From Paramoeba atlantica (lineage: Eukaryota > Protista > Discosea): DNA of 64,000 bases. The DNA is taken from assembly GCA_977017575.1 (NCBI GenBank), contig CDRNVI010000018.1:248001-312000 (forward strand). The letters run 5' to 3'. Numbering within the stretch: the first letter of the stretch is position 1; the number at the start of each line of letters is the position of its first letter. The position numbers were made by a program, and so were the translations under genes. The notes beneath the pieces are model-generated. The model searched no databases. It was given only the letters and a program-made list of their open reading frames with translations, and had not been told where the DNA came from. Of this stretch, positions 5,340 through 48,583 are shown piece after piece.

Positions 5340-5449
5340 CTTTTAGAAGGTGTTTCGTGTCGTTGTGTAACACACCGCAGTCTGTCACGGCAATGCAACG
5401 AAAGGAGTCACTGTCCACGCCTTTCTCTGCCAAGTATGTGTAAAAAAAG

Positions 5450-5485
5450 CTTTAACGATAAAGATACAGTTTCTGTACCTTGTTG
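5450..5485 (+). other. Spliced-leader relic (SL nt 4-39), preceded by A7G
   Basis: CTTTAACGATAAAGATACAGTTTCTGTACCTTGTTG, 33 nt upstream of the ORF1 ATG. Confidence 0.85.
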
Positions 5486-5518
5486 GTTTACTGTTCTCGA
5501 CAAAAGTTTCTCGACAAA

Positions 5519-6424
5519 ATGACCGTAATCGACATTCCTTTGACAGCCCGACGGTCATCACGCAGTGCTTCTCCGGCCTCTGAGCCGCTCGTGCCTACCG
5601 AGCCGCTTAGTCAGCAGGAGTTAAGTTTGGTTTGTACAGTGGCAAGGGAGAAATTGTTGTTCAAAAAATCGGTACAAGTGCGTGCGATCTTTCGACGGAA
5701 AGATGATTTAAATGGTGGTCGACAGACTGTGATGGGAAAGTTGCGAAAGGATGGCCTGGATTTATGGGCGGTGTGGGAGGACAAACCGTCCAAGGAGTTT
5801 TTTTTTTTCCAAGGAGTACCAGTTTCCTCATCCGGATTTGGATTATTATGAGCTCAACATTATCGAAGATCGAGAACTACCACCCGCTCTTATTGAGAAC
5901 TCTTCCCAATTACTCACCGATGAAACGCATCAGCTGGGCTCACGTAATGAGGCTGCCGGCATGCAAGAGGTAATTGGGGGGAGAACTGGTGCCGCACCAA
6001 TTTCAGAGGCTTTACGGGAAGGCAGATTACTCGACCCGAATGCTTTGAACGCCTACGAACCTTTGACTTACGAGCCTTGGATTAATGCGGCGGATGAAGA
6101 TGGTTTTCGCACTAGGGACCTGATTCGCGAGCTTCGGGATGCGCCTGAGTTTGGTTTACGCGTTAATCAGTTTTATTATGATCGCACGTTTATTAAGCAG
6201 CAAGAGCGTTTGTTTAATTCTGTATTTTGCAAGTGGATTATTTTTGCGCGTTTGATACCCAACTGGAATGAAGGTGTGTACCTCGAAATGGGACGTGGGA
6301 TTGTGCAGACACTTCGTGACGCGTACTGGCGAGCACGCCGCGTAGATGTGGACTTGGTCCATCAAAAAATGGAGAAGGATATCCGTCCGGACGACAAGTT
6401 TTATTATTCAACATGGGCACAAAT

Positions 6425-6461
<37 letters not shown>

Positions 6462-6470
6462 CTGATATAA
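5519..6470 (+). pseudogene. VIPER-like ORF1 (gag-like), frameshifted by a poly(T) micro-insertion
   Basis: ORFs 5480..5851 and 5751..6470 join when 5799-5817 is removed. DLIRELRDAPEFG..LRDAYW aligns with ELVRELREYPQFG..LRNAYW of 62484..63998. Confidence 0.75.
6424..6462 (+). repeat. (AAC)n microsatellite terminating ORF1
   Basis: Direct reading, about 13 units. Confidence 0.85.
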
Positions 6471-6519
6471 TCAGTTAAGGGGTTAATATTTTCCCTTAAA
6501 CATTTTTTCTTTTTTTATA

Positions 6520-6947
6520 GAAATCCACGCCGAGGGGCTCCATGAAAACATATACGTAAACAAACAAATATAAGTAAACAAATATGACTAATATAATCAC
6601 ACATCCAAATCGTCCCGAAATCCAAGAACGTATAGTAGATAGAATTCACACGCTTATACCTCGTTCAAAAGAAAGCCTGCATAAAACCAAAAATCATATG
6701 TCACGTTGTTAACGGGGTTCCCCCCCACCGGAACCCTCGGCCAAATGGCTGGGGGCTTGGTGGGTGGGCACAAAAACTTAAACGTAGTACGACTAACAAC
6801 CTAACAAGGATATATAAGAAATAGTAGAATATCCAATCCATGTAATTATAGAACACAAATCATAATTTGAAGAAATTATGTGCCCCGAAGGGCCAGCAGG
6901 CAAATACATAACAGCCCCTCGGCTAAATTTCAAAACGTGGACTATTA
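6520..6947. mobile_element. 428-bp non-autonomous repeat (GAAAT...CTATTA), copy 1
   Basis: Conserved ends and internal blocks shared with 17210-17629 (opposite strand), 57332-57793, 57794-58023 and 45176-45252. Confidence 0.75.
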
Positions 6948-7044
6948 CGATCTATAACTTTTCTCTCTCCGTATCCCCCTAACGGGGATTCTGACTTTCT
7001 TCACTCACTTTTCAAATCGCGAGGAATTGGGTGGCCCGAATGTC

Positions 7045-7640
7045 GCTGCTGGTTGTCATCCGTTGAAGTCGTGGCGCAGAAAACCTCACGAGCGAATTCA
7101 CAAATGGTCCGAGCAGAAAGAAATTTTAGAGGCTCAAGAACTCTCTGCAAATCCACTGCCGAGAGATGCGGTCCGGTACATCGAGAATACACCGATTTTC
7201 GTTTCCTGAGCAGAAAAGGATTTTTGGCGCTCGAAAGAAACGCAAACATGATGTTAACCCAACGTCCAATACGCAAACTCTGCGCAGCAGCTTTACGAAT
7301 TGTACCTGTCGTCACGCACGTCGACTTGTCCCTCGGCACTTCGACATCCGTTGAAATCATAGCGCAAAGAACCCCGCAAAGAATGATTTGGCACATGGTC
7401 CGAGCAGAAAGAGATTTTAAAGGCTCAAGAACTATTTGCGACACATCCGTTGCCGAGATATGCGAACCTGCCCACCGAGAATACACCAACGCATTCTGTT
7501 TCCTGAGCAGAAAAGGACTTTTGGCGCTCGAAAGAAACATAAACTTGATGTCATTCCAATGACCGATCCACACAAATTGTGCAACAACTCCATGGATTTC
7601 GTCGAACAATTCCCACGTTGACGTGTCCGAAGGCACTCTA
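7045..7640. repeat. Degenerate duplication of about 290 bp with internal GAGCAGAAA sub-repeats
   Basis: 7050-7340 and 7345-7640 are similar (ATGGTCCGAGCAGAAAGA; TTTCCTGAGCAGAAAAGGA). Confidence 0.7.
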
Positions 7641-7788
7641 CTTCCTCGAAATCCTCCACGTACTCCGATCGTCGCTTGCGGCGCCCCAGCGCCCAGGTAC
7701 ATAAAAGTGAAGGTTGTCAGAATAAGAAAAAGAAAAACATCAACAAACAGTTTTAATAATAAAATAACTAAAACAGTTTTATCATCAC

Positions 7789-8037
7789 GTGAATGATCAA
7801 TTGGTTGAGCGACAGAAGCAATATGCACGTGTTCAGTCTTTCTCTGCTCCACCATCTATGCAAGTTTCGCGTCCCAATCAGTTCCCACCGCGACATAATG
7901 CATATCCTCCACGACGAAATTTATTATGCTTTGGATGTCGGTCGCCTGATCACATTTGGCGCAACTGCCCGAAGCGATTCCAGCAGGATTTTCGAGGACG
8001 GGTGGCTGGCCCTGCCCACAGCAGCAAGAGTTTCTGA
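7789..8037 (+). CDS. Gag-type CCHC zinc-knuckle fragment of the VIPER-like element
   Basis: CFGCRSPDHIWRNC = C-x2-C-x4-H-x4-C. Confidence 0.7.
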   Translation: MNDQLVERQKQYARVQSFSAPPSMQVSRPNQFPPRHNAYPPRRNLLCFGCRSPDHIWRNCPKRFQQDFRGRVAGPAHSSKSF

Positions 8038-8342
8038 CAAAACCACACCCTAACGGCCAGTTCTATAGTAACATTCAAACGAAACAGAACGACACTTTTA
8101 ATGCAAGTTCCCAAAAGGAGAAGAGTGGAAGAGAACATTGTACCAGTGGATGTTCGCAATGTGCAGAATTTATCAGGGAGATACGTGAGATGCGAGATTT
8201 TTAGATGTTTAGATGCGAGAATTTTAGATGTGAGATGCGATTTTTCTTTTTTTTTTTTTTTTTGAGATGCGAGAATTTTTACGGCGGAACTTTGAGTTTG
8301 CAAGTAGCGGATACGGCGCGCGGAAATCTAGTGAAATTACTA

Positions 8343-9207
8343 ATGGGGGTCACAGCAATGACCCCGGAAATCAGGCAGGCATTGGATGCGATGGGAAATA
8401 TGTGGAGCGCATCGACTTGGCAGGCGAGGGCAAGGTTGTGGGAAAGGTTGACGGCCTTTTGTCATTGGAAACAAATCGAAATCACCCCAATTCATGCAGT
8501 AACTTTCATCGCAAGTTTACCAATCAAAATCCAAGGAAAGTTGTCATACGCCCGAAGTTTGGCGTCCCTACTCAACTTAGCCGGCAAGGGAACGAACCCG
8601 CTACGTTTTTACATCAAGTCACTCATGGCGGAGGGTGCGACGGAGCCGTCAAATGGCGCCACTAACGCCGGAGTTACTGAAACAATTGTGGAACCACCTT
8701 CCTCACAGCGAAAGACATACGTTGCTGCTTTGTTGTTGGAAGGCGGCAAGCCGGTGGTCCGAGACAGCGATGCTCACACGCGACAGATTCCACGAAGTGT
8801 CTTCGACAAGAATCGTGATATGGTGGGGCAGACAGACCAAAGCATCGCGGTACAACCCGTATCGAGCGTCAATGTATACGGTTGTGGAAGGGCCGGGCAC
8901 GGATCGTCTAGCGGATTACATAACAAAGCTGGGGCAGTTGCAGCCGATGTCAAGAACATCGGTATCCGAAGTGGATGCGAAGATACGCCGAATTCTGGGG
9001 ACAGGTTTCGGCTCACACTCAGCGAAACGAGGAGCTATAACACAGCTGTTTGCGGAAGTAGTGAAGAGCAATACGCGCCTCGAGGAAGTACAACGATTAG
9101 CAAAGCATCAGTCCCTCGATTCGCTTCTTCGATACAACGCCGACCCGGTTACCACCGCGTTGGTGTTGGGCACGCAGAAAGCAACCAGCAAGTTACGGAT
9201 CATGTAG
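8343..9207 (+). pseudogene. Tyrosine recombinase of VIPER-like copy 1, one frameshift near 8650
   Basis: Catalytic set AASRW (R), HSAKRG (H..R), KH..LLRY (H, Y). The N-terminal MWSASTW block is in another frame, but is contiguous in copy 2. Confidence 0.85.
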
Positions 9208-10451
9208 AGGCAAGTAAAATTTTTCGTAAGTTCTTGGATGACATACCACAGGAAAAGGTGCGTCACACTATTACCAGAACGCGAAGGACGTCAAAGGTCG
9301 CGTTACCGAAGGATTATTCTATTCCATTGCATATCAAGCAGGGTATTCCCCGGATGTCGGTTAAGAAGTTGAGAGAAATGATGAATGAGGCGACTGGTGA
9401 TCGATTCGATGAGACATTGGAGACTTTATTACGTTTACCGGAACAGGCATCCACCATTCCGCTATATAAGTCGTTTTTGCCGCACAATGACATAAAGGAA
9501 TTAGCAGCGGCGGGTTTCATTTCCAGAGTATCAGACGAAGAAGCTAAGGTGCGGCCGTCTTTGGATTGGGTGATACCTTTCACAGTGGTGGAACCTGGTG
9601 AACATGAACATTCCGAACGTCGTCGTTTTATAGCGTGGACGCAGGCAGATAATGATCGCATTAAGGAAATATATGAACCGTATGTCCCCGTTAGACATGC
9701 AGCGTATTATCTGCACCGCGCCAAAGAAGAAAGTGCCGTCAAACGGGATTTGGCGTGTGGGTTTTGGCAGGTCGCAATACCAGAGGAAAGTCGTCAAAAG
9801 TTTCGCTTTAAAGACGCAAAAGGGGATCTATACGAATTGACTGTAATGCCCATGGGGCATCGTTGCGCTCCCGAGTTAATGCACACCTTGACAGCAACTC
9901 TAGCAGGTGACAGAAATTACTGTACCGAAAAGCACGCGTTCTTTTATTCCGGACTGGACGTTTATATTGATGGTATCCGTTTTGCCGCGCGGGATGAGAT
10001 AGCAAATAAGTACGCTCGTTTTGTGGATGATAGAGCAGACAGATTAAATGCCTTGTTTAAAGATCGTGGAGAGCCGCCCGCACAGATTTACACATTCAAT
10101 GGAATCAAGTATTTTCATAGACAAGGGAAAGTGGCTTTAGGAGACAAAATTTCGCGGCGATTGCGACAGGATGACTTTGCTGCAGCCACTTATGCATCTT
10201 TGGAATCGGGGGTAGGCCGCCTTATTTTCGCCTCCGCTGTAATGGGTGTTCACCTTCCTCACTATCACTTGGAAATGAAAATTGTTCGTCGTCGGATTAA
10301 TAATCTAAATCGCGACCCTACTTTGCTGGATAAGCCCGTTTCCTTACCGACACCGGTGCGAATCGCACTTTCGGAGTGGCGAGATAAGCTGTTGTATAAA
10401 ACTCCCGTCGATCCACCTCCACACCCAGACACGGTGCCGCATAACTATAAA
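9208..10451 (+). CDS. Reverse transcriptase of VIPER-like copy 1 (C-terminal part of ORF 8205..10481), interrupted by family A
   Basis: RRRFIAW, KRDLACGFWQV, MPMGHRCAP, YIDG; homologous to 60174..61205. Confidence 0.85.
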
Positions 10452-10467
10452 TTTCTGTACCTTGTTG
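10452..10467 (+). other. Spliced-leader relic (SL nt 24-39)
   Basis: TTTCTGTACCTTGTTG just inside the left TSD. Confidence 0.8.
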
Positions 10468-10491
10468 GCTTTTTTTTTTGATTTAATCGCT

Positions 10492-13400
10492 ATGACACGC
10501 CTTGCCCACGCACGCCTTGCTCGCGCAGACTCTCAGACATCGAAAGGCTTGGGCCTGAAAACAGGTAGACTAAAAGTGAAATCACGAATGCAAGACAAGA
10601 GGGGCCAAGAGAACAGTGAGAAAAAGTGCATAGTCAATGACGTTTCGGGTGACACTTTTGATGAGACTATTCCCCCCACCACGACAAAGACGCGCATACC
10701 ACGAATAAAAGTCATTGGAGCATCTACCCCCCCACCGACCAAACCGAAGAAAACGCCACGCATCAGAATCGTCGGAGGAGAACCTCTTCTTTCAAAGATT
10801 TGGGCAGACCACGGGACTGACCAGGCCAATTACCTCCAGGGAAACCAGAACTCCGAAGAAGGATCTGTAGCTCTGCCAAAAGATTGGGCTGGCCATGGCG
10901 AACAACACGGCGAGCATTCCGACAATACCATTAAAATCAAGCCTAAAACTTTTCGATTCACGCCTTCAAACGCCCAATCAGCCAGCGACCCACAACAAGC
11001 AAAAACGTCGGATATCGAAACGACTCAAGACTCAAGACTGATCCAGCGCGATATCGAAAATGATGAGCAACTCTCTGAAGATGAAAGTGACGAGATGTCC
11101 CTTGACAGCGATTGTGGGGTCATCGAAGAGCTTGCAAATCGGGGCGCCGTTTCCAAAGCACCGGATCATGTGCACAATGTCGTAGCAAAGTGGGGTAAAG
11201 GCACAGCTTGCATAATCGAATGGGGATTCCGTCAGGAAACGACAAACTACGTATCGAAGGGAGTCGTCGTAGGCAGAACATCTCGCAAAGGACTAATAAA
11301 AATCAAGATTTCATATGCACCAGCCCAAGGCAGCGAAGGTCCAAGTGGATTCCTTTACCTTCCGCAGACAAGCAAAATCAGAATCTGTTCCATACGAGCC
11401 ACGAAGCTGATTAAAATCGAAGCCATCGCGCGGAACTTAGAAGAACAAGCTGAGAACGTATCGAATGAAGATGGTCAAGGAGATCTCGAGCCACTGCCCC
11501 CGATGACGCCCATTGATTCATCATTTTCAGTCCATGTAGTCGCAATCTTTCGTGCAATACTTCGTGGGTATCCAACTGTAGAACTTGATTCCGAGAAAAC
11601 TGCAGTTTGGCACAAATTCCTGAACGCCCCAAGGGACTCGCTCGCAACCATTCGCCAACTCTCACGGCAAAATCAACGCGTAGGACATATAATCAAGCAT
11701 ACGGACCAATCAGAGGGCGAAAATCTGAGCGCCCAACAGAGAGAGGAACTAGGAATCGACCGTCGCTCGATTAGAAATGCTTTAGTGACCGCCCGCGCCG
11801 GAAACGTAGGGAAAGCTACTCGAATTCTGGACAACGTCTACAAGGAGTCCGCTCTCACAGCAGATGAAAAGGTACAAAAACTTCGCACATTGCATCCGGA
11901 AGGACCTAACATACAAATCCCGGAAGCCGACTTTCCACGAATCGGCATTGTAGAGAAATCGGAAGTCCGTCTTGCGGTCGAAAAACTTGCGCGAGGGGCC
12001 TCTCCAGGACCAAGCGGACTCAGCGAAAGTATGATGCGTTTGCTAGTTGACGATGAAGAAACGTGCCTGTCATTGTGTCACATGGTCCGAGATGTTATCA
12101 ATGGTGAAATACCGTCAAGCGTGCGGAAGCGTCTTACTCGATGCCGAATTATTGCTCTTCCGAAGCCACAAAATGGTATACGCCCGGTTGCCATGGGGGA
12201 CACGATCCTCAAAATCTGCGGGTCCATTTTACTTCAGCGACATGAAGCCGCACTACGAAAGTACTTTGCGCCCATCCAACGAGGTGTACTCCACAAGAAC
12301 GCGTGTGAATCAATAGTGCACGAACTACTAAGTGAATACGAGAATGGACACGCATTGATTACGGTTGACTTCAGCAATGCGTATAACACTCCACGTCGTG
12401 ACGCTATAACCCAGGCACTACTAGATAATCCCGTGTTTAAACCTTTCATGCGCATGTTTTATCTGGAATACGGCCTGCCATCTGAACTATTGTTTTTCGC
12501 CCACAATGCCCTTTTTGCAACCATAGAAAGCTCTTCAGGAATTCGCCAGGGATCATCCCTATCCTCCATGTACTTCTGTGCACTCTTACAAGGTCCTCTT
12601 CGAGAAGTCCTAAGCCTATACCCTGACGTCAAAATAAGAGCCTACCAAGACGACGTGACTCTCAGTTCCACCAACGTGCGATCACTCGAAGCGGCGTTCC
12701 TGCACTTACGCGAAACCACAGCCGAGCTCAATCTATGCGTTAACTTTCAAAAATGTGAATTCTTTCAGAAATGTGCGTCATGCGAACCCTTTTCATTAGA
12801 AAACTTAGGCGTTAATCTTTGCACCGAGTCGATAAAGATCCTAGGAGCCTATATCGGCAAAGACAATGTGGTAGAAGATCTTCTCCTGCGCAAATTGAAC
12901 AAGCACAAATGCCTATTTCGTCGCCTTCTTCTCATGGGCCCGAGTAACCTCTCTCTGGCGATTTTGCGCCGCTGTACAATTCCACGCCAAGACTACCATT
13001 TAAGAGTTCACCGCCCGGAGGCTACTCTTTACCTAGCCCAATCTTTCGAGCAGCACATACACGAGGTCCTGCAGAAATGGTGTGGCGCCGATGTCCAGGC
13101 ACTCAAGCTTGCAGCGCTCCCGCAAAAACTAGGCGGATTAGGCTTGATTTCTTGCACTCTGAAACAACAATATTACTTCGCAGCTGCCCGAGAATCTATT
13201 GAAGAGCAATTTGAACCCAATAACGCTCCGGTAGATTCAGAGGGCAGCGGCAAGGTCAAAGCTAAAGCTCAGAGCCGCGCGGAAAAGGCCCGCAAATTTC
13301 TTAAAAAGAACCTGAGCCAAGCGCATGACAAGCAATTAATTGAAGTGCAAAAAGACTCAACCTTAACAAATATCTTGAAGCGCACCAAGGAAGCTAATTT

Positions 13401-14145
13401 TCACCTCGAACATACAAGTAACTACGTTAACCCGTATCTTTTCAGATACACGCTCATGATGCGCTTGGGAATCGGCGTGCCAAAAGCACCGGCCAAAATG
13501 ATTTGCCCTGGATGTTCGAATCAAGAATCTCCTTCAACCATCCTTCCCCACGTTGCTGGATGTTCCCGTTGCTCCGGCATGAACTCTACCCGCAAGCATT
13601 CACACATAGTCCGTTATCTCGCAGAGTTATGCTCAAAAGCAGGCCTTCCTAGTGTCATCGAACCGCGCATTTACTCTTCGTACCACTGCACAAAATGTAA
13701 GTGCACGATTTCCGCAGAAGTCGCCGAGCAACATCCTTGCAAAGCCCGCCGCATTCGTTCCGGCCCAGATCTTGCCATCATGTGGCCTCACATCGGTGAG
13801 GTGCTCTATGATTTTACAGTGGTTCACACGTGCTGTACTAGCTATGCGAAACAAACCAGCTCTGCCCTCATGCAACAGGTCGCCGACAGAAAGTACAAGA
13901 AATATGTGGTTGAGAAAGGCGTCGACAGCGATTCATTCAAATGTCTGGCCGCAACAGATTGCGGCCTGCTACATGTTGATACAAAGGCCCTATTAAAGGC
14001 TCTCTCACAAAGAGCGAAGCTGAACTATGATAACGTGCGCAACGCGTTCCAACTCGAGATTGAGAAGATGTCCGCTTACACGATAGTATCTCAACTCAGA
14101 GACTACATCCCGGCAGAGAAATGGATGGGAGGACTTCGGTTGTAA
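10492..14145 (+). CDS. RT + CCHC + RLE polyprotein (family A), intact
   Basis: IRPVAMG, VDFSNAYN, GIRQGS, YQDD, CPGC..HVAGC, RSGPDL..YDFTV..KYKKY. Confidence 0.9.
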   Translation: MTRLAHARLARADSQTSKGLGLKTGRLKVKSRMQDKRGQENSEKKCIVNDVSGDTFDETIPPTTTKTRIPRIKVIGASTPPPTKPKKTPRIRIVGGEPLLSKIWADHGTDQANYLQGNQNSEEGSVALPKDWAGHGEQHGEHSDNTIKIKPKTFRFTPSNAQSASDPQQAKTSDIETTQDSRLIQRDIENDEQLSEDESDEMSLDSDCGVIEELANRGAVSKAPDHVHNVVAKWGKGTACIIEWGFRQETTNYVSKGVVVGRTSRKGLIKIKISYAPAQGSEGPSGFLYLPQTSKIRICSIRATKLIKIEAIARNLEEQAENVSNEDGQGDLEPLPPMTPIDSSFSVHVVAIFRAILRGYPTVELDSEKTAVWHKFLNAPRDSLATIRQLSRQNQRVGHIIKHTDQSEGENLSAQQREELGIDRRSIRNALVTARAGNVGKATRILDNVYKESALTADEKVQKLRTLHPEGPNIQIPEADFPRIGIVEKSEVRLAVEKLARGASPGPSGLSESMMRLLVDDEETCLSLCHMVRDVINGEIPSSVRKRLTRCRIIALPKPQNGIRPVAMGDTILKICGSILLQRHEAALRKYFAPIQRGVLHKNACESIVHELLSEYENGHALITVDFSNAYNTPRRDAITQALLDNPVFKPFMRMFYLEYGLPSELLFFAHNALFATIESSSGIRQGSSLSSMYFCALLQGPLREVLSLYPDVKIRAYQDDVTLSSTNVRSLEAAFLHLRETTAELNLCVNFQKCEFFQKCASCEPFSLENLGVNLCTESIKILGAYIGKDNVVEDLLLRKLNKHKCLFRRLLLMGPSNLSLAILRRCTIPRQDYHLRVHRPEATLYLAQSFEQHIHEVLQKWCGADVQALKLAALPQKLGGLGLISCTLKQQYYFAAARESIEEQFEPNNAPVDSEGSGKVKAKAQSRAEKARKFLKKNLSQAHDKQLIEVQKDSTLTNILKRTKEANFHLEHTSNYVNPYLFRYTLMMRLGIGVPKAPAKMICPGCSNQESPSTILPHVAGCSRCSGMNSTRKHSHIVRYLAELCSKAGLPSVIEPRIYSSYHCTKCKCTISAEVAEQHPCKARRIRSGPDLAIMWPHIGEVLYDFTVVHTCCTSYAKQTSSALMQQVADRKYKKYVVEKGVDSDSFKCLAATDCGLLHVDTKALLKALSQRAKLNYDNVRNAFQLEIEKMSAYTIVSQLRDYIPAEKWMGGLRL

Positions 14146-14398
14146 GAAGTCAGCGGACACGTCTATCTGGAATATTTATTTATTCATTTATTTATTTATT
14201 TATGAGAAGCGAACCCGTGACACAAGCGAAAAGCATTTCTAGAATGCTTAAATCATAATTCGATGCTCCTTCTTTCCTATCCCCTCCTTTGACACCCTAT
14301 ATTCCCCCTCTTCCTCATTCATTGAATTCATTCCGTTGGTCGCTCGCTTTTCCTATACAGTCGTGACCACATTAAGCCAAAAGCACACAAGATAACAC

Positions 14399-14515
14399 AA
14401 GACCATCGTTTTTTGTAAGACCATCGTTTTTTGTAAGACCATCGTTTTTTGTAAGACCATCGTTTTTTGTAAGACCATCGTTTTTTGTAAGACCATCGTT
14501 TTTTGTAAGACCATC
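14399..14515 (+). repeat. Tandem array of the 18-mer AAGACCATCGTTTTTTGT, 6.5 units
   Basis: Direct reading; same unit as 42021-42360 (opposite strand). Confidence 0.95.
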
Positions 14516-14891
14516 GCATAACCATATTTTGTGTACAGACGCATCCTCTACGGGATGGGGTGCGGTCCTGTATTTGGATTACGGGCAAGTCGTTTGTGCT
14601 GGGTCGCGGTGGCCACCTGATTTTGAGTATGAAGTCAATCGCGCAGAGGCACGCGCCGTTCGCCTCGCCTTTGAAAAATTTGGCCATCACTTTGGTAGGG
14701 ATACGTGTGTAGATGTCTTCGTTGATAACACTTCCTGCGTCGCGGCATTAAATCGTAAGATGTCTAATTCGGATGGTATTACGTCGGAGCTTCGCCGTTT
14801 GTTGGATTATTTAAAGCGCAAAGGGTTGGTAGTTAAAGCCCAGTATATTTGCTCGAAGGAAAATCCTGCCGATCCGTACAGCCGCATGTAG
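14516..14891 (+). CDS. RNase H of VIPER-like copy 1
   Basis: CTDASSTGWG, VNRAEARA, FVDNTS, ENPADPYSR (DIRS-type RNase H D-E-D-D). Confidence 0.9.
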
Positions 14892-15009
14892 TCAAAATGA
14901 ATTGAAAGTTCATCTAATTCAAAATATAGGTAGTTCCAAAAATATAGTATAACTTATTTATAACATATTTATAACTTATTTGGTATGTAGAATCATCAAA
15001 AAAAAAAAG

Positions 15010-18000
15010 AAAAAGAGTGGCAATGTTGAAAGAGCGGCAATCAGGGCAGAAATACTGTCACGTCAAGGGGAATACTCTAGGGGAATAGCCGCTCTAACCG
15101 CAGCACCCATGGCGCCGGACAACGAGGAGACCCTTGCGAAGCTTCTAGAAAAGCACCCAAATCCTCACGAAAACCCACTTGAGAACGATCTTCCACCGAT
15201 TGAGGGTAATCTCCTGCGTCTGGAGGAAGTGGAAGTCAGGAAAGCGGTCGAAAGTTTTCGCAGAGGGTCTTCTGCCGGAACAATGGGTCTACGTCCAGAA
15301 CACATCCAGGCCGCCATTTTGGAACACGCCGACAAGAAGGTGGGTCCTCTTTCGTCCCTCACTCGCCTCGTGAACCACATGCTCCAAGGAAAGGCACCGC
15401 CAGAGGTACAACTGTTCTACGCTGGAGCCCGTCTCTGCGCTCTGGAGAAAGGTGAAGAAGATGTCCGACCCATAGCAGCAGGCGAAACCCTCAGACGTCT
15501 AGTAAGCAAAGCGGCATGCGTCGCCGTAAAGGAGAAGGCTGAAACTTTATTCCGGGGAAGACAGTATGGTGTGGCTGCATCCGCGGGGGCCGAACGAGTA
15601 ATTCATCTGTGCCGGAAAACAATGCTAAACAACATGGGGAGCGACAGTCTTGTTCTCTGTAAGGTAGACCTCAGAAATGCGTTCAACAACGTCAGCAGGC
15701 CTGTCTTCACTTTGCTCACACGTCACAATTTTCCAGAACTTTCGCCCTGGGTGGAATGGTGCTACACAAACCCGAGTTGTCTTACCTACGGGAATCACTT
15801 CCTATCCTCAGCCGAAGGCGTCCAGCAAGGTGACCCATTGGGTCCGCTTCTCTTCTCTCTAGCCCTTTCTGGGGTAACCGAGGAAATATCATCCCGATCA
15901 AACCTAGATTCGCAACTATGGTATTTGGACGACGGAGTTCTCATGGGGGAGGCGGCGGAGGTTCGAAAGGCGCTTGATGTTTTTTCCGAGGTTGGTTCAC
16001 AATGCGGGCTATTTCTGAATCCGAACAAGTGTGAAATAATAACGCCACCTGCCTCAGCCCATCACACGACTTTATTTCCGGAAATACCTACCTCCAAAAT
16101 TCGTGTTGACGGGAATTTCGATATTCTCGGATCCCCGATTGGGTCTGCGGAGCACTGCGCGGAGTTCCTAATGTCTCACGCCATCGAACCCGCACGCGAG
16201 ACTCTCGCAGCAATAGGGCTAATAGGCGATCCACAAGTTGCCATCGCCCTCATCCGCCAGTGCACTGGCTTCTGCCAAATGGTGTACGCTCTCCGCACCA
16301 CACCCCCCCAGGCTCTTTTTCAACTTTGTAGCCTACTAGACGAAACCGTTCTTAAAGCTGTCGAGTGGGCACTTTTCCCCCTGGAACCCCACGCACGTGA
16401 CCAAATCCAACGAAGGAAACGCCACGGAGGTTTCGGCCTTAGGTCTACAACACTCCACGCGACAGCCGCTTACGTTTCTTCCGTCGCGCACGCCGCCGAC
16501 ATAGACGACTGGGATCCTACAGAGGCTGATGGATTCGCCATTTCGGTACAAGACGTAAACCGTAAAGCAGGAGTAGCGCTAGTGGATCCCAACACGGGGC
16601 GCACACCCAAGCAGGACAAGCCACTCCCATACTCAGGCCACCATCACAACTTCCTCCCGAAAAGGAAACGCCCACGGAGCACTCAAAACAAAATGGAAGC
16701 GGACAGGGCAACCGCGCCGGAGATGGTCATCCCTCGACAGCAGCAACTCAGCCAGGCTATCTCACAGCAGGAATTCACCACAGCATACGAGCAGGCTGAC
16801 CCTCGCACTCGCGCACGGTGGGTTTCAGAGTCGGGTAAGGGAGCAGGTAGCTGGGCTTTCGTGAAGCCCTCTAGGAGCAAAGGATACGCCTTCACACCAA
16901 CAGAGTTCCGCACGCTGTCCCAACAACAACAACAACAACAACAACAACACGCTGTCCCGCTGGTGGCTGGGATCCGACATCTATCAAGAAGATCGCCCTT
17001 GCCCAGCGAAGGGATGCACATTACCTCTGCAGAAAAATGGGGAACATGCATTGTTATGTAAGAACGGACATGGCCTCATCACCCGTCACAACGCGGTCTG
17101 TGAGCAATTCACAGCATTCTGCAGAAAAGCCGACATAGCTCCGCAAAGGGAGAAAAGCCTGGGAAATCGTGGTCCAAGAGGGGGTCTCACCAGACCTGCT
17201 GACGTGTTTTAATAGTTCACGTTTTGAAATTTAGCCGAGGGGCGGCTATATATTTGCCTGCTGGCCCTTCGGGGCACATAATTTTCTCAAATTATGATGT
17301 AGTATTCTCTAATTGCATGGAGGGGGGTGTTTACTCGTTTGTTATATTCTTGTTAGGTTGTTATTTTGTTACGTTTAAAGTTTTGTGCCCACCCACCGAG
17401 CCCCCAGCCATTTGGCCGAGGGTTCCGGTGGGGGGGGAACCCCGTTAACAGAGTGACATTGATTGTGTTGTTTTATGCAGGCTTGTTTCTTTTCCATCTT
17501 TGTGCGTGTGAAATGAATGAATGATATGTTGTGTCATTTTGAATTACGATTGAGCTATTCATAGTTGTTCATTTATTCATATATGTTATCAGTGTATATG
17601 TTTCCAGGGAGCCCCTCGGCGTGGATTTCCTCCCGAATTACACCCTGGGAAGTGGTATGGTGTTTGACTTCGCAGTCACCCACGCACAGCAACTAAAGTA
17701 TTTGGACTCTGTCCGGAATGCTAGCTGGGTGGCTGCGGGATCTTTCGCTGAACACTACTCAGCAACGAAGGATAAACAACGCCAGGAAGCGGAGGAAGCA
17801 AAATTACTTTTTACGGCCATGGTAGTTGAATCCTTTGGCTCTTGGAGTAAAAGCGCGATGGCTGTTTTGTGGAAGGTGGGGGCGTTACGCGCAAACGCGT
17901 CAAACGGTCTACTCACAGACACTCAAGCCCGAAATGACCTCAAAGAGCTGAACGTGGCTCTCATGCGCTCCCAGGCCCGGATGATGGTCTCTAGGATAGT

Positions 18001-18037: not shown

Positions 18038-18079
18038 GGGATCTCGGGAATACCCACTGGGACATAAACCGCTGGTCCG

Positions 18080-23622: not shown

Positions 23623-23669
23623 GAATTATTTTCCTTATTTCACTTTTCTCCAGGTACGCGGTTCCTTCT

Positions 23670-42360: not shown

Positions 42361-43848
42361 GTGTATGGTTTAGCGGTCTGAACAATATTCGCCTACCCGA
42401 AAGTCTAGCGAATGAAGGCGTTCAGATAGCGGAAAAGGCAGTCAAAACATTAGGAGCCTACGTAGGGGAAGCAGACAGAGTCAGTGAGCTGCTTCTTGCC
42501 AAGCTTGAAAAGCATCTAACTATTTTTCGGCGGCTTTGTGACATGGGAGCAAACAACGTTTCGCTTCTCCTCCTGTCGCGATGTGTTAATGTACGACATC
42601 GATACCATATAAGGGTCCATCGACCAGAAGAAACTTTTGAAATGGCAAAATCTTTTGACAAGCAAGTGCAAGAAGTTCTTACTGCATGGTTTGGATCGAT
42701 GACACCAAAGCAAATTGCTTGGGCGCGTCTACCTGTGAAGAGCGGAGGATTGGGGTTAACGCCCACTGATCTCTTGCGAAAATCGGCGTATGAAGCATCA
42801 AGGCACAGTGCTCTTGAACGACTTAATTCCTATTCAGTTCGAGCACCCAGTCTCACGTCTCCATCGCCGGTGGGAAATGAAGATCAGATAACCCCTCCCC
42901 ACGATGAATTTGTAACTGAAGCAAAGCTTAACAGAGTCATTAAAGAATCGTTGAGTAAGGACACGAAAATTGCACCAGTGCTGAGAGCAGCAAGTGAAAA
43001 AGGGAACTCCGCGTGGCTTCATTCGACGGCAAAGTTAGTGCCTTCCAAATTCTTCACATTAGCTTTGATGCCACGTCTTGGTCTAAGCCACCCTCGTATT
43101 CCCGAAAGTCTGCAATGCCCAGGATGTCGCACCCTTCTGGATTCTTCATCAGCCTTTTCGCACATAGCTGGATGCGTCCAGTGTTCCGGAAATAATACAA
43201 CAATGAAACATAATAATCTGGTGCGTATTATCTATGAACTGTGCATGAAGGCGGGTGTGCCATGCGAAAGGGAACCTCGACAGTTTACTTCTTTTAAATG
43301 CTCTACATGCGGGGAATCGTTCCCACAATGGCGAAAAACTGATCATCAAAAAGTTTGTAGAAATGCGAGCCTCCATCGGTCAGGACCTGACATTGTAATA
43401 CATTGGGCAACTGGGGAAATCTTTTATGACCTAACAATAATTCACGAGCTGGCGCCCACTAATGCACGGAAACGTAGCGGTACCCTGATGAGAGAGGCCA
43501 TTACGCGCAAGCACAGCGCATACGTGGCTTCCGGGATGATACCTCAAGAGCGTTTCGTATGCCTCCCAGTCCTCTCCGGTGGTGCTATGCATCACGGGCT
43601 CCGGCACTTGTTGCATACGTTGGCGGACTGCAGCGGACTTGATAGGGTCCGAACACTGAACGAATTTTCTCTGTGCCTGCAGGAGTTAAATGGGTCGATT
43701 ATATTCTCTCAGCTGAGAAATTATTTATCTAATGACGATTCACAAAACATGGGCCTCTAGAATTTGACATTAAAAACAAAAACATTGGAAACTTGAAGAA
43801 AAAAAAAAGTATAATTAATATAGCTATTATAAAAAAAAAAAAAAAAAA

Positions 43849-43887
43849 AATCTTTAACGATAAAGATACAGTTTCTGTACCTTGTTG
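43849..43887 (+). other. Complete spliced-leader-like sequence merged with upstream A20
   Basis: Direct match. Confidence 0.85.
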
Positions 43888-45092
43888 AATTTTTCTTTCT
43901 CTTTATTGCTTACTAGGGTCGCACCATGCCGCCCGATGATTCCTTTGATGCCAACGCGTTACCAATGGATGATGACTCTTTTTGCCAGGAACAAAAGTCA
44001 CACAAACCCGGAGATTGGGACCAATTCGCAGGAAACGCTCACCTGATTTCCGGCCAAAGCACCTACAATGAACTTTTGTATACGACACCTATCCCCGAAA
44101 ACGTACCTAAACACTGGACCGAAAGAGCCTACAAGATCGAGGCAGAGGAACCTACACCGGACACAGGCAGAATGACCGCGGACGAAGAGACAAATCACTC
44201 CCTTGTCGTGGCAAACAACGTGGGAATTACTTCGGAGGCCTCATCCGCCCACATTTTCTCTCCAACTAAGGCTACAAAGCGCAAGAATACTGATTCTGCC
44301 CCTACCACATACCACAACGCCAATACGCAGCAGAAGGATGTAGAACGTCAATGCCCAGCAGAAGGATGTACGTGGAAAACCCCACCACATAGCGGAAAAT
44401 GGCAGGCATTTTATCACCATGTAGCTCATCGACACGGCAAAAACATTCCAAACGAGTGGTGGGAGGGAGAGGGAAGATTCCTCTGCAGAGATTGTGGCAG
44501 ACACTACGCCAAGAACAAGCTCAAGTCTCACCCCAAAAACTGCAGGGGCCGCAACAATTCCGGACGGTCATTAGCCCCACCTCTTCCAACGGCACGTCCC
44601 CAAAACGCAGAAGAAAATCCAACAGACAATTTGCCATCACTCGGCTCCATCTGCGCACTTCCCATGAGCACCTGCAAAGACGTTCCACACTGTTGCAGAT
44701 TCCTCTGGGCGAGCATCCTCACGCAATCCTTGACATCCGCAGTGAAGGAAAACACGGTAGAGGCATGGACACTTCTCGCAATGCTCCCTAAGTGTGTCCT
44801 ACCAGCACCTTTCCGAGGCGGTCGCAAAGGCCACACATCATACTCTACGTACGTCGAAAACCGCATGAAACTGTGGCTAGCGGGGGAGTACCTCTTGCTA
44901 TGGGAAGATGCCCAGAGGGATCATTATAAAAAGCGCTCCAGATCACACGACTCCGAAATCGATGCAGACAGAGCGGCAATTCGAGCCGAACTCTTGGCCC
45001 GCCAGGGGGAATTTTCCAGGGGAATGGCAGCCCTAACCGCAGCCCCCATGGCGCCAGACAATGCAGATACCCTCGAAAAGCTCTTGGAGAAG
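43849..45092 (+). mobile_element. CRE family D-like copy 3, 5' part (ORF from 43926), truncated
   Basis: Zinc fingers CPAEGC..HVAHRH and CRDC..H..C; colinear with 23670-24845. Confidence 0.8.
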
Positions 45093-45175
45093 TTTTTTTT
45101 TTTTTTTTTTGAATGCGATGAAAATATTTGAATGAAAGTGTGTGTTAGAATTTTTTTTCTTTTTTTTTTTTTTTT

Positions 45176-45252
45176 GAAAATTATAACCCCCTTCCGGGGC
45201 ATTTGACCCGATATTAGCCCCTCGGTTAAATTTCCATGCGTAGACTTCTATT
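45176..45252. mobile_element. End fragment of the 420-460 bp repeat
   Basis: CCCCTCGGTTAAATTTC and the ACCCC-CTTCC-GGGG hairpin are equivalent to 6880-6947. Confidence 0.55.
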
Positions 45253-45369
45253 GTATTACCTAAAGGTCTTAATAAAGGTGAAGGTCTTAATAAAGGACAT
45301 TAATAGATTATGATTATCACACTAAACACTTAATTCGTCCGTAATTACTTAACTTAATTCGTCCGTTAA

Positions 45370-46738
45370 TTACGGACTGAGTCCAAATACTTTAATTGCT
45401 GGGCGTGGGTGACCGCAAAGTCCAATACCATGCCTTGCGCCAGAGTCCCTTTTGCCAAGGATGCAGTGGGCAGGAAGACATCCGCAGGCCTCGTGAGAGC
45501 TCCTCCGGGGCCTCGGTTTCCGAGACTCATCTCGCGCCGTGGTCCCAATTGGGCCTTGGAACAGAAAGATGAGAATTGTTGTGCCAGGGCGTTGTGGCGG
45601 GCGATGATGCCATGCCCATTTTTACAGAGCAAGGCGTGTTCACCGTTCTTGAGGAGAGGGAGGGTACAGCCTTCGGCCGGACAAGGCCTATCCTCTGGGA
45701 AAACATCCACCCCCAGCCACCAACGTGATAGCGTCCGGAACTCCGTGGGGGTGAAAGCCAACCCTCTTTGCTTTGAGGGTGTCACAAAAGCCCAGTTTCC
45801 GGCCCCTTTACCTGACTGAGAAACCCAGCGTGCCCTCGTTCGGGCGTCTGCCCTTGCGTAAGCAGCATAGAACTCCTGTTCAGCGATTGCGTGGCTCAGG
45901 TGTTTTTGTCGTGGTACGATGGTTTCTGGTTCTGTGATGTCGGGTAAAAGGGGGTGGCGGAGGGAATGGGAAAGTTTTCTTTTCGCCGGGTGTGACTGGG
46001 CGTCCCGTGCCTCGTTGGGGTAGTCTGGTGAGCTTGGCTTGAGGATACGTCCAGTATACAGATCGATCAGGACAGTCCCAACTTTTTGATTTATTTCGCG
46101 TGCCGAATCAAGAAACCCCTCAGCTTCGGCTGAATCCCACTTATCCTTGTCGGCGGCAAAAGCCACAGAAGAAACGTATGCGGCCGAGTGGTAAAGCGAC
46201 GATGAGCGAAGGCCGAATCCCCCGTAACGTTTGGGCCGTTGTAGTTGGTCAAGGGCGGGAAGATCAAGAGGAAAAAGTGCGTGTTCCACAGCGCGCATGA
46301 GGTGAAAATCCAGCTGACGACAGAGTTCTCCGAGGCCTTGGGGAGGGGTGGTACGCAGTGCGTATACCATTTGGCAGAATCCGGCGCACTGCCTTATAAG
46401 GGCGAGGGCCACTTGCGGGTCTTCTATCAAGGAGATGGCTTCCAACGTGTCGCGGGCTGGCTCGATCGCGTGTGTCCTTAGGAAAGTCGCACAGTGTTCT
46501 GGAGAGCCCACCGGACTCCCAAGGATATCAAAGTTTCCGTCATACCTTATTTTGTCGCTAGGAATGTCGGGGAAAAAGGAAGAGGTGTGGGCAGACGCAG
46601 GCGGGGTGATGATTTCACATTTTGAGAGGTTCAGAAAGAGTCCCCACGGAGTTCCCACTTCCGCGAGAACGTCTAGTGCCTTCCGGACTTCCTGTGGTTC
46701 GCCAATGATCACACCATCATCGAGATACCATAACTGTG
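45370..46738 (-). pseudogene. Inverted family D-like RT C-terminus / RLE fragment
   Basis: QLWYLDDG..RHNALA..RPADV..LDFAVTHAQQLKYLDSVRN. Confidence 0.85.
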
Positions 46739-47413
46739 TTTTTTTTTTGCAAATAATTGGGGGGAATAGTATTGAGTCTAACTTTTTATGTATGGAGTCC
46801 AACTTTTCCACAATTTCCACACTTACGGCCCTTCACTTTCCCTTACTCCCCATACTTTCCACACCTACTCCTCTTAGCCCTCTCGTACTTCCCTTCCCCC
46901 ACTCCCTACCCCACTCACCGATCCGCATGCACCCAGGCCCGTATGGTCCTGCACCTCCGCTCCCACCCCGTTAGCAGTAATAAATACTTTTGTTTGCCGT
47001 ACGAGGGTGGGAGACGTGGAGGCCACGAAACACAAAGACGTCGTCACGCCGAGGGAGAAGAGCGCGGAGAGAGACACGGGGGGACTGACGCAGGGGCGAG
47101 AGGAGGCGAAGCACGGGCCCATCTGCCAGGAAACTCTGCCCCCACCCCGTGAGCGAGTATTGTATACTTTTGGCTGCTGACACGGGGGTGGGGGAAGCGA
47201 GAGAGAGAAACACAACAGGGGGGCAAGCGCACTGCGGAGGGAGGGTGAGGTGGGGGGATGCGGCGCAGGGGGGTGATGGGACGAGACGGGGAAGGGGGAT
47301 GCCGACAAAAAGGAGTGTATTTGAGGGGGGTGCCCTCCCATGGTCTGGAAGATGGTGTATGGAAGAAAAGGGGAAATAATTCAACAAGGTACAGAAACTG
47401 TATCTTTATCGTT
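46739..47413 (-). mobile_element. Short SL-to-poly(A) retroposed unit of unknown origin
   Basis: SL nt 8-39 at 47382-47413, about 630 nt body, A10; first 110 nt similar to 19415-19525. Confidence 0.6.
47382..47413 (-). other. Spliced-leader relic (SL nt 8-39) after poly(A)
   Basis: Direct match. Confidence 0.85.
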
Positions 47414-47710
47414 TTTTTTTTCGTACATGGAGAAAATCTTTGCCACAACCGCCTCGACCGCCACCCGGTGTCCAAGTGTGCACCACTGTCACATCATAGA
47501 GTATCTCCCCAACATTTGGCCACATTATGGCCAGATCAGGGCCTGAACGAATTCTCCGAGCACGACAAGGGTGATGTTCTGCGGCTTCAGGTGAAATGAA
47601 ACATTTGCACTTCGTGCAGAAGAAGGAAGAATGAAGGCGTGGTTCTTTTTTTTTTTTTTTTTTCGTACATGGAGAAAATCTTTGCCACAACCGCCTCGAC
47701 CGCCACCCGG
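47414..47710 (-). repeat. Duplicated 47-nt 3' end + poly(A) flanking a CRE A/B RLE fragment
   Basis: 47422-47468 = 47664-47710; the interval encodes HSSFFCTKCKC..RSGPDL..YDVTVVHT. Confidence 0.75.
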
Positions 47711-48553
47711 CGTCCAACCGGCAGGCTTTTCTTGGTCGAGTGAGCTGGCCACCTTCCAGTGGCAAGATGAATGGGTGTTTCCACCCACGCACCTCAGGGG
47801 AGACACCCCATTACAGGGTAGTGCGAGACTTGCTTACCAGAGTTTTGTTGAATCTCGGATTGCGTCAGAGACTCTGGTAGCTCACTCGCTAAAAACTCCA
47901 CTGCTCCGGATTGTTAGTCCAGGAGCGCTCCTAGCGTGGAGAAACGAAGGGTCTAGCCTAGAAAAAAGGATCTAGTCCCTTCGCTTCTCCGGGAGATGGG
48001 GAGGGATAAAACCTCAGCTAGCACCAATGCCGTTCCACCTCCACCGAGAGGGTAGGGTTAGCGCGCTCGCTAACAACACACATGCCTTGGCGACGGGATG
48101 CTACCCCGTCTATGCCCCGGAACGCGGTTAACGACGCCGCGAACAAGGGTTGAACAGGAATAGGAACGGACACATTCCCTCCTGCCAGCTCGGAAACCCT
48201 TACGTCGGAAGGCTGGGGTCGCCACGCCCCATCACCGGCAACGGTCCAATGCCGGGCTCCTGACCTCGTCTTCCCCTTCTGACGCACCCAAAAGGATATG
48301 CCGTGGCAATGGCGATCCAGTTAGGATAAACAAAAAGGGGGTAGAGCCCTGCCTAAGCCCCGTCGAACTTGGGACAATTCCGACGAGTTTACTTTCCGAG
48401 CCATGGTACAATAATTCGGATGCTCCAGCATACTCAACTTCGAAATACCTTTGAAATGGGCGCAGTGCGCTAAACGCGAATACATGCTTTGCGATTAGAT
48501 TCCTGCATGGTGAGTTGAACGCGTTTTTGGAATCAACCGATAGTATGGAGTAT
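47711..48553 (+). mobile_element. Probable 3' end of an unidentified element (ORF tail to 47975 + structured UTR)
   Basis: UTR shares motifs and helix topology with the family D 3' RNA; the ORF tail was not recognised. Confidence 0.4.
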
Positions 48554-48583
48554 CGATAAAGATACAGTTTCTGTACCTTGTTG
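48554..48583 (+). other. Spliced-leader relic (SL nt 10-39)
   Basis: Direct match. Confidence 0.85.

What the first reader, a model, noticed from the sequence alone, without database searches (positions are those of the whole stretch)
5442..48583. Elements insert at the leader carried by other elements, giving a self-propagating multi-family array
Seen in sequence: poly(A) runs, mostly tails of upstream elements, abut the leader at A7G|nt4 (5442), A19-CTTA|nt1 (18574), A14|nt4 (19365), A12|nt8-10 (23581), A20|nt1-3 (43831) and A11|nt8-10 (47421, minus strand). A tail-less junction occurs at nt10 (48554). Established knowledge: in target-primed reverse transcription the tail joins the downstream target, and CRE/SLACS/CZAR cut near nt 11-12 of the mini-exon. 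Inference: SL-specific RLE endonucleases use the leader relics of resident elements as surrogate targets. Each new copy brings a new target, so arrays can grow away from SL genes, loosely like HeT-A/TART head-to-tail growth. This would explain the 14-kb sense-strand chain 15010-29000.
Basis: partly seen in the sequence, partly recalled or inferred. Interest (0 to 1): 0.82.

Follow-up and report, generated by a model that had tools for sequence, protein, structure and literature searches.

The report
LINE copies stacked on poly(A) tails
Retrotransposons in this spliced-leader-using protist pile up head-to-tail, most likely because new copies join the poly(A) tails of older copies, while the spliced leader at each junction is a tag carried in on the RNA and not the landing site.

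Summary
A poly(A) run just upstream of a leader copy is far more frequent than chance (background 0.45% of positions; 13 of 20 near-complete leaders after hand correction).

The interpretation, that the leader DNA is the endonuclease target, is not what the data favour. I surveyed 267 kb: the window plus ten loci of the same species.
- Leader copies start at nt 4 equally often with a tail upstream (7 of 13) and without one (3 of 7).
- Junction positions scatter: before nt 1, nt 1-3, nt 4, nt 8-10.
- Only about 13 of 82 element tails abut a leader. Another 12 abut 5'-truncated element bodies with no leader.
- One locus holds at least six stacked tail junctions (three on ORF-bearing bodies, the rest on short 3' fragments) and no leader at all.
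- A relative of family D inserted twice at sites that are neither leader nor tail, with 8-9 bp target duplications.
- The leader is almost invariant (1 mismatch in 820 nt) while the adjacent 5'UTRs diverge. This points to resupply by trans-splicing.

Best reading: trans-spliced, polyadenylated RNAs of R2-like LINEs integrate at resident poly(A) tails. Each copy brings a new tail, so arrays do seed themselves.

The parts
294..4152 (+). Element A' (RLE LINE). It starts with leader nt 25-39 (294-308) and ends in A21 (4132-4152). It is nested inside another copy of family A (1-293 plus 4153-5102), with the target duplication ATGACAAG at 286-293 and 4152-4159.
   Evidence: the flanks are 99-100% identical to 13040-13332 and 13325-14273. 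This is an insertion at a site that is neither leader nor tail.
3922..3966 (+). A 30-nt, 5'-truncated micro-copy of an A'-like 3' end plus A15, flanked by the target duplication (A)TTTAGGAT.
   Evidence: the same 3' end plus poly(A) occurs at L007 2132.
5442..5485 (+). Junction: A7, G, then leader nt 4-39, which heads element F1.
5450..15008 (+). F1: leader, ORF1, RT, RT_RNaseH-type RNase H and an A11 tail (14998-15008). Element A is nested at 10452-14273. F1 looks like an mRNA retrocopy of a non-LINE retroelement.
15009..18592 (+). Element C (CE family), 5'-truncated with no leader. It directly abuts the F1 tail and ends in A19.
   Evidence: the ORF2 homology begins 14-20 nt after the tail, at about residue 100.
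18593..19378 (+). Filler CTTA, then mini-D: complete leader (18597-18635), 5'UTR, a D-like C-terminal fragment and an A14 tail.
19379..23593 (+). D1: leader nt 4-39, a 1131-aa ORF (RT plus CCHC plus RLE) and an A13 tail.
23594..27852 (+). E: leader nt 10-39, ORF1, ORF2 (RT plus an RLE motif) and an A13 tail (27811-27823). An 8-nt micro-copy follows with its own A runs (27824-27852).
27853..33502 (+). D2 (99.7% identical to D1 from 28762 on). It has a degenerate leader at 27853-27904, a different 5' module, a 1.1-kb foreign insert at 28921-30046 and an A12 tail that is followed by non-leader sequence.
29450..29488 (-). A complete leader with no tail upstream, inside the 1.1-kb insert that has inverted termini.
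43831..45092 (+). The A20 tail of a D-like element (ORF 42033-43760) running into a complete leader (43849-43887), which heads a CE-family 5' part.
45093..48553 (-). A minus-strand stack of five units: (1) a 5'-truncated D/A-like piece with an A18 tail (47663-47646); (2) a 224-nt A-like fragment with an A10 tail (47421-47412); (3) a mini-element with leader nt 10-39 (47411-47382) and an A10 tail (46748-46739); (4) a CE body truncated at the YLDD motif of the RT, with an A16 tail; (5) a 49-nt piece with an A18 tail. The stack ends in the antisense of another element, not in a leader.
48554..53365 (+). G: leader nt 10-39 with no tail upstream, then a 1405-aa ORF with RT, zf-RVT and an RLE motif.

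Best explanation
The leader is a passenger. RNAs of at least three RLE-type LINE superfamilies (AD, CE, G), their deletion derivatives, and at least one non-LINE retroelement (F) are trans-spliced and polyadenylated like any mRNA of this organism. [quoted passage not shown]

A full-length cDNA therefore ends in the leader. It usually stops at C4. I infer that this reflects a block at hypermodified cap-proximal nucleotides, as with trypanosome cap4.

Integration happens preferentially at the poly(A):poly(T) tracts of resident copies. I infer that the T run of the nicked bottom strand pairs with the RNA's poly(A) tail and primes well. This preserves orientation and places the incoming 5' end, whether a leader or a truncated body, directly against a resident tail. 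Each insertion adds a new tail, so arrays seed themselves through tails and not through leaders.

Shown: the anatomy, the counts, the RLE fold, the insertions with target duplications outside tails and leaders, and the invariance of the leader. Inferred: priming on the T run, the cap-related stop, and the order of arrival of the elements.
For: 1. Tails versus leaders. Of 82 A>=10 runs that follow a same-strand element ORF, the script called 10 as abutting a leader; hand-reading of filler-containing and short-tail junctions gives 13 tail-leader junctions in the whole dataset. 14 runs (12 independent junctions) abut a 5'-truncated body within 40 nt. 46 are followed by same-strand element sequence further on, and 7 by opposite-strand sequence. 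Same versus opposite is 70:7, p=3.5e-14, though the runs are not independent.
2. L010 12836-15894 stacks at least six tail junctions (three on ORF-bearing bodies, the rest on short 3' fragments), and that locus has no leader anywhere.
3. The leader start does not depend on context. Nt 4 is the start in 7 of 13 tail-associated leaders and 3 of 7 others. Nt 10 occurs with a tail (23594, 47411) and without one (48554).
4. Fillers of 1-4 nt (G, G, CTTA, GCAG, TAG) lie between tail and leader, as expected at a 5' junction.
5. A'-type elements also insert at sites that are neither tail nor leader, with 8-9 bp target duplications. The same family also stacks on tails (L007 1769 and 1902).
6. The leader has 1 mismatch in 820 nt, while same-family 5'UTRs differ by 18-38% over the first 40 nt. 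D1 and D2 use poly(A) sites 24 nt apart. Both fit mature mRNA templates.
7. The junctions involve every family, including non-autonomous minis and the RNase H-bearing F. This needs only a shared RNA feature (the tail), not a shared DNA specificity.
8. Cap4 methylation status is routinely read out by primer extension in trypanosomes (PMC4783070).
Against: - No empty-site allele was available, so the order of arrival at any junction is inferred, not seen.
- Repeated insertion at one resident leader, with the newest copy nearest to it, can mimic several tail-to-truncated-body junctions in chains that end in a leader. This applies to 15008 in the window and 4597 in L002.
- RLE LINEs are usually site-specific, and their trypanosomatid relatives target leader genes.
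- Tail-directed insertion leaves no visible target duplication, so it cannot be proven from sequence alone.
- The loci were fetched through RT proteins, so they are biased towards repeat-rich regions, and many junctions lie in the same chains.
- The cap explanation for the nt-4 start rests on analogy. The cap chemistry of this organism is unknown.
Confidence: 0.55

Rival explanations
1. Concatemer cDNA made by template jumping. During one integration the R2-like RT reaches the 5' (leader) end of one RNA and jumps onto the poly(A) 3' end of another. Several leader-to-tail units of unrelated families are then laid down at once.
For: - The RTs are closest to R2. End-to-end template jumping with a few untemplated nucleotides is a known R2 RT property (my own knowledge).
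- Fillers G, CTTA, GCAG and TAG lie at the junctions.
- Three leaders show an aborted leader fragment, a short filler and then a second leader: L001 9847, L005 9470 and L009 8369.
- 99%-identical E copies carry swapped 3' modules, and D1 and D2 carry swapped 5' modules.
Against: - About half of the internal junctions are at 5'-truncated bodies, which would need jumps from internal positions or from broken RNA.
- Chain members differ in integrity. F1 carries nested insertions and C is frameshifted, while D1 and E are intact. This suggests different ages.
- The sequence cannot separate this model from tail-targeted insertion.
Confidence: 0.2
2. Leader-specific RLE endonucleases of the upstream element nick the leader relic of a resident element, so the tail is joined to the remaining part of the leader.
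For: - The elements have R2-like RLE domains.
- CRE/SLACS/CZAR and NeSL set a precedent for targeting leader genes (established knowledge).
- Tail-leader contacts are strongly enriched.
- Starts at nt 4 and nt 8-10 recur.
- Several chains end in a leader, so repeated use of one site could explain them.
Against: - Only about 13 of 82 tails abut a leader.
- The nt-4 and nt-10 starts also occur with no tail upstream.
- Positions range from 4 nt before nt 1 to nt 10.
- The window's minus-strand stack (48553-45093) and the L010 stack do not end in a leader.
- In the three cases with a leader 5' fragment upstream of a leader-headed element, the matching 3' remainder is not found after that element's tail.
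- All three divergent superfamilies, and elements mobilised in trans, would each need the same DNA specificity.
Confidence: 0.1
3. Assembly artefact or recombination. A runs were joined wrongly by the assembler, or the arrays were built by unequal crossing-over.
For: Homopolymer runs are error-prone in long reads, and the region is highly repetitive.
Against: - The same junction classes occur with different partners at many loci of a separately assembled dataset.
- The junctions are precise to the nucleotide at leader nt 4 or nt 10.
- Mixed-family order is not what unequal exchange produces.
Confidence: 0.03

Closest known systems
CRE1/CRE2, SLACS, CZAR (trypanosomatid leader-gene LINEs) and NeSL-1
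   Same: - An RT followed by a CCHC motif and a restriction-like endonuclease.
- A poly(A) tail.
- Physical association with the spliced leader, in an organism that uses a 39-nt kinetoplastid-type leader.
   Different: - Those elements sit inside leader RNA genes at one fixed position (nt 11/12), with leader nt 1-11 on their 5' side and the intron downstream.
- Here the whole leader is fused exactly at nt 39 to each element's own 5'UTR.
- The junctions vary in position, and most copies are not next to a leader.
Leader-tagged retrocopies of dinoflagellates (relict DinoSL retrogenes)
   Same: A DNA-encoded leader at the 5' end and a poly(A) at the 3' end mark retroposed, trans-spliced mRNA (PMC6050394 and PMC12014239, listed). 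Short stacked leader relics are also seen here.
   Different: Here the tagged RNAs are the retrotransposons themselves, from several families, and they stack on one another's tails.
Giardia GilM/GilT and Drosophila HeT-A/TART/TAHRE head-to-tail arrays; Chlorella Zepp
   Same: Arrays of non-LTR elements on one strand, tail against head, with 5' truncations. GilM/GilT are head-to-tail (PMC5537684) and are placed in the CRE clade (PMC10088271).
   Different: - Those arrays are telomeric. No telomere repeats occur in the 267 kb examined.
- The arrays here mix at least three superfamilies and include leader-capped full-length copies.
L1 and Alu insertion into A-rich sites and the A tails of older elements
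   Same: Preference for A:T tracts, orientation preserved, 5' truncation, and trans-mobilisation of other polyadenylated RNAs.
   Different: L1 uses an APE-type endonuclease with TTTT/A specificity. The families here carry an R2-like RLE.

Membership tests
RLE-bearing (R2-like, early-branching) non-LTR retrotransposons | RT domain most similar to R2-type RTs | tested here: met
   RVT_1 is found in all large ORFs. The best solved-structure matches are R2 proteins for D1 (E=1e-7) and for E ORF2 (E=7e-8).
RLE-bearing (R2-like, early-branching) non-LTR retrotransposons | C-terminal CCHC motif plus a PD-(D/E)xK restriction-like endonuclease | tested here: met
   For AD, the CCHC residues, PD137, D150 and K177 are invariant in 15 sequences. 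The model has pLDDT 86, and its top fold matches are R2 proteins at TM 0.5-0.6 and E=1e-5, followed by PA-N endonucleases. For CE and G the evidence is motif-level only.
CRE/SLACS/CZAR-type leader-gene-specific elements | Insertion at one fixed position of the leader exon (nt 11/12) within leader RNA genes | tested here: not met
   Junctions lie 4 nt before nt 1, at nt 1-3, nt 4 and nt 8-10. After nt 39 comes an element 5'UTR, not a GT intron.
CRE/SLACS/CZAR-type leader-gene-specific elements | Nearly all copies have their 3' end against leader sequence, with the leader's 5' part on their 5' side | tested here: not met
   About 13 of 82 tails abut a leader. No orphan leader 5' fragments lie at element 5' boundaries, and the three tandem relics lack the matching 3' remainder.
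CRE/SLACS/CZAR-type leader-gene-specific elements | Phylogenetic placement of the RT in the CRE clade | not testable with these tools
   No named CRE, SLACS or CZAR sequence was retrievable. Relatives of AD come only from one unnamed ENA sample. CE has 30-34% relatives in sponge and Symbiodinium records.
Retrocopies of trans-spliced mRNA (leader-tagged retroposition) | Complete leader fused exactly at its 3' end to the transcript's 5'UTR, with poly(A) at the 3' end | tested here: met
   28 relics all end at nt 39 and are followed by family-specific UTRs. The leader has 1 mismatch in 820 nt while the UTRs diverge. The poly(A) sites vary.
Retrocopies of trans-spliced mRNA (leader-tagged retroposition) | Target-site duplications flanking the leader-to-tail unit | tested here: inconclusive
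   Clear for A' (8 bp) and for one micro-copy (8-9 bp). None was found for the other units, which is expected if the targets are A tracts.
Telomeric head-to-tail LINE arrays (GilM/GilT, HeT-A/TART) | Arrays at chromosome ends, adjoining telomere repeats | tested here: not met
   No TTAGGG-type runs occur in the window or the ten loci. Other telomere repeat types were not searched.
L1-type A-tract insertion | APE-type endonuclease | tested here: not met
   Exo_endo_phos is found only in the unrelated minus-strand LINE at 39078-42005. The stacked families carry RLE.

The most novel reading that the evidence does not exclude
At least one RLE family may recognise leader DNA and reuse leader relics carried by resident elements as landing pads. 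This would explain the recurrent nt 8-10 junctions. In that case both ends of a copy, tail and leader, would seed further insertions.
Probability: 0.1. Interest if true: 0.8.

Novelty: new variant of a known kind. Interest (0 to 1): 0.5.

Why it matters
- It shows that R2/CRE-like LINEs in a leader-using protist travel as ordinary trans-spliced, polyadenylated mRNAs, and that they mobilise other such RNAs.
- It identifies poly(A) tails, not leader genes, as the feature shared by their pile-ups. This is a simple route to large co-oriented repeat blocks between gene clusters.
- The leader start positions frozen in DNA, peaking at nt 4, may be a genomic record of where reverse transcriptase stalls on the modified cap. 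That could be checked against the cap chemistry.
- It is a caution that a leader next to a LINE tail does not by itself show leader targeting.

Tried and rejected
- **Target duplications.** I searched for them around leader-headed units and after every tail. Only the A' insertion and one micro-copy gave clear ones.
- **Orphan leader 5' fragments.** A 10-mer scan found mostly 10-11-mers. Those checked (W 63746, W 54880 minus) lie inside continuous ORFs and look like chance matches.
- **True leader RNA gene at 5486.** The GT after the leader there is followed within 33 nt by the start of an ORF, and the motif is absent elsewhere.
- **Master copies without a leader.** I looked for copies with a native splice acceptor in front of the shared 5'UTR start. 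Every true 5' end with that start carries a leader.
- **RNA families.** Rfam found nothing at the gathering threshold in the window. A relaxed scan of 47600-48400 gave only a chance miRNA hit.
- **Source organism.** An exact look-up of the D1 protein found nothing. Text searches for the leader sequence found no relevant paper.
- **Primary papers.** Arkhipova and Morrison 2001 and Higashiyama 1997 are not held. I used secondary sources instead.

Full report
**What is in the window**

The window is almost wall-to-wall retroelements. A 39-nt leader of the kinetoplastid/diplonemid type occurs 8 times with its last 23 nt exact, and 3 more times as shorter relics. In every case it ends at nt 39 and is followed by an element's own pyrimidine-rich 5'UTR and first ORF, not by a GT intron.

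**Element families**

An all-against-all comparison gives these groups:
- **AD superfamily:** A, A', D1, D2 and several D-like copies.
- **CE superfamily:** C, E and others.
- **G:** the element at 48554-53365.
- **F:** an element with an RT and an LTR/DIRS-type RNase H.
- **An unrelated APE-type LINE** on the minus strand.

AD, CE and G all have a CCHC motif followed by a PD...D/E motif after the RT. For AD, these residues are invariant in 15 sequences. A confident model of the domain (pLDDT 86) matches R2 proteins best (TM 0.5-0.6), then PD-(D/E)xK nucleases. The RTs of D1 and E also match R2 best among solved structures.

**More data from the same species**

Relatives of D1 and E in the protein collection all come from one ENA sample, ERZ24900291. 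I fetched ten loci from it. They carry the same leader and 99%-identical copies of the window's elements at other positions. The combined dataset is 267,196 bp.

**Is the association real?**

Yes. The dataset holds 28 leader relics, and 20 of them start at or before nt 12. The script found 9 of these directly after an A run (p about 1e-16, against a background of 0.0045). It missed tails separated from the leader by a filler containing A: CTTA at 18593, GCAG at L007 2218, TAG at L008 6165, and the partial relic at L009 8369. Reading these by eye gives 13 of 20.

**Which partner is the target?**

Five results point to the tail and not the leader.

1. *The leader start is a property of the incoming copy.*
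   - Nt 4 is the commonest start with a tail upstream (7 of 13) and without one (3 of 7: L003 2015 minus, L004 21369, L005 9490).
   - Nt 10 occurs after tails (23594, 47411) and at 48554, where the flank is the antisense of another element's RT.
   - Overall the positions range from 4 nt before nt 1 to nt 10. That is not the behaviour of a site-specific nick.
2. *Tails mostly do not touch leaders*. I took the 82 A>=10 runs that follow a same-strand element ORF. The script called 10 as abutting a leader; adding filler-containing and short-tail junctions read by eye gives 13 tail-leader junctions in the whole dataset.
   - 12 independent junctions abut a 5'-truncated body, with ORF homology beginning within 40 nt. 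Examples are 15008 and 46739 (minus) in the window, and L002 4597, L007 14037 and L010 15894.
   - Most of the remaining runs are followed by further same-strand fragments. Same versus opposite strand is 70:7, though these are not independent events.
   - L010 stacks at least six tail junctions (three on ORF-bearing bodies, the rest on short 3' fragments) between 12836 and 15894, and that locus has no leader anywhere.
   - The window's minus-strand stack (48553 down to 45093) ends in the antisense of another element, not in a leader.
No such orphan fragments lie at element boundaries. Three tandem relics exist (L001 9847, L005 9470, L009 8369). For none of them is the matching 3' remainder found after the tail of the downstream element.
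4. *These elements are not strictly site-specific.*
   - A' (294-4152) sits inside another A copy with an 8-bp target duplication.
   - A 30-nt A'-like micro-copy at 3922-3966 has an 8-9 bp duplication.
   - The same family also stacks on tails at L007 1769 and 1902.
5. *Every family takes part on both sides of the junctions.* This includes non-autonomous mini-elements and F, which is not a LINE. A shared RNA feature explains that more simply than a shared DNA specificity spread across three divergent endonuclease lineages.

**Where the leader comes from**

The relics carry 1 mismatch in 820 nt. There are none in the 438 nt of near-complete leaders that my detection criterion did not constrain. 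Meanwhile the first 40 nt of same-family 5'UTRs differ by 18-38%. D1 and D2 are 99.7% identical but use poly(A) sites 24 nt apart. Both observations fit mature trans-spliced, polyadenylated RNA as the template.

I attribute the nt-4 peak to reverse transcriptase stalling at modified cap-proximal nucleotides. Trypanosome cap4 comprises four methylated nucleotides, and its methylation state is read by primer extension (PMC4783070). This is an inference by analogy, because the cap of this organism is unknown.

**Mechanism and its rivals**

- *Favoured (0.55):* target-primed reverse transcription primed on the T run of resident tails.
- *Template jumping (0.2):* an R2-like RT jumping from a leader end to another RNA's poly(A) end would give the same junctions. 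The fillers, the tandem relics and the swapped 5' and 3' modules support it. It fits the many truncated-body junctions, and the unequal integrity of chain members, less well.
- *Assembly artefact (0.03):* unlikely, since the junction classes recur with different partners at many independent loci.

**Limits**

- No empty-site alleles were available.
- No leader RNA genes are in the sample.
- The loci were chosen through RT proteins.
- Junctions within one chain are not independent.

**Comparison with what is known**

- The enzymes are R2-like.
- The leader tag parallels the relict-leader retrogenes of dinoflagellates (papers listed).
- The arrays resemble Giardia GilM/GilT and Drosophila telomeric arrays, but no TTAGGG-type telomere repeats are present here.
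- The tail preference resembles L1 and Alu behaviour, but with a different endonuclease.
- I found no paper describing leader-capped LINE stacks in Euglenozoa. That is an absence in the searched library only.

Noticed in passing
window 5450-15008 and 58294-63998 (minus): Family F has an RT plus an LTR/DIRS-type RNase H, yet it carries a leader at its 5' end and an A11 tail, like an mRNA retrocopy made in trans. Both F copies hold a leader-relic-led A/D-like insertion in the RT-RNase H linker, about 110 nt apart in equivalent coordinates.
   Followed up: partly
window 28921-30046: A 1.1-kb insert in D2 has inverted termini (CACTTCCGTGAG), internal direct repeats and two 56-bp tandem units. It contains a complete minus-strand leader with no tail upstream. 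Its nature is unknown; it could be a DNA transposon or a promoter-bearing unit.
   Followed up: no
window 294, 10452, 60189 (minus); L001 13438; L004 2648, 15991 (minus), 22720; L009 3338 (minus): All eight relics that start after nt 12 begin at nt 20-27, mostly nt 24-27, just after the AG at nt 22-23. None follows a tail. In the A-like family the relic looks like an inherited part of the 5'UTR. How that RNA 5' end forms is unexplained.
   Followed up: partly
L001 9847-9920; L005 9470-9525; L009 8369-8420; L002 7519; L004 2664: Tandem partial leaders occur: a leader fragment, 4-9 nt of filler, then a second leader. Short duplications of the last 7-10 leader nt also occur right after a full leader. 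These suggest template switching or repeated rounds of retroposition.
   Followed up: partly
window 33646-34522, 14399-14516, 42021-42362, 56249-56896: Large 17-18-nt satellites, with up to 51 copies, have units that resemble the 'ttaagac' 3'UTR ends of D-like elements. They may be expanded 3'UTR motifs.
   Followed up: no
window 23624-23655, 48584-48620; L002 21649 (minus); L004 21405: Right after the leader, E-type 5'UTRs consist of a pyrimidine tract ending in CAG, followed by GTACGCGG. G-type UTRs contain TACTAAC. These look like splice-acceptor and branch-point signals retained inside the retrocopy.
   Followed up: no
window 27553-27823 versus L007 13815-14037; window 19379-19961 versus 27853-28761: Near-identical copies carry different 3' modules (E copies, 99.4% identical) or different 5' modules (D1 and D2, 99.7% identical). 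The elements are mosaics, consistent with tail insertions that later become heritable or with RT template switching.
   Followed up: partly
window 47664-48330 (minus): About 650 nt of GC-rich sequence that matched none of the element ORFs lies between a truncated RT fragment and a 50-nt 3' module that a neighbouring unit also carries before its tail. No Rfam family matches it.
   Followed up: partly
window 37412-42005 (minus): An unrelated LINE with an APE endonuclease, an RT and a separate RNase H ORF interrupts the plus-strand array. The same 18-mer satellite as in F1 lies just upstream of it.
   Followed up: no
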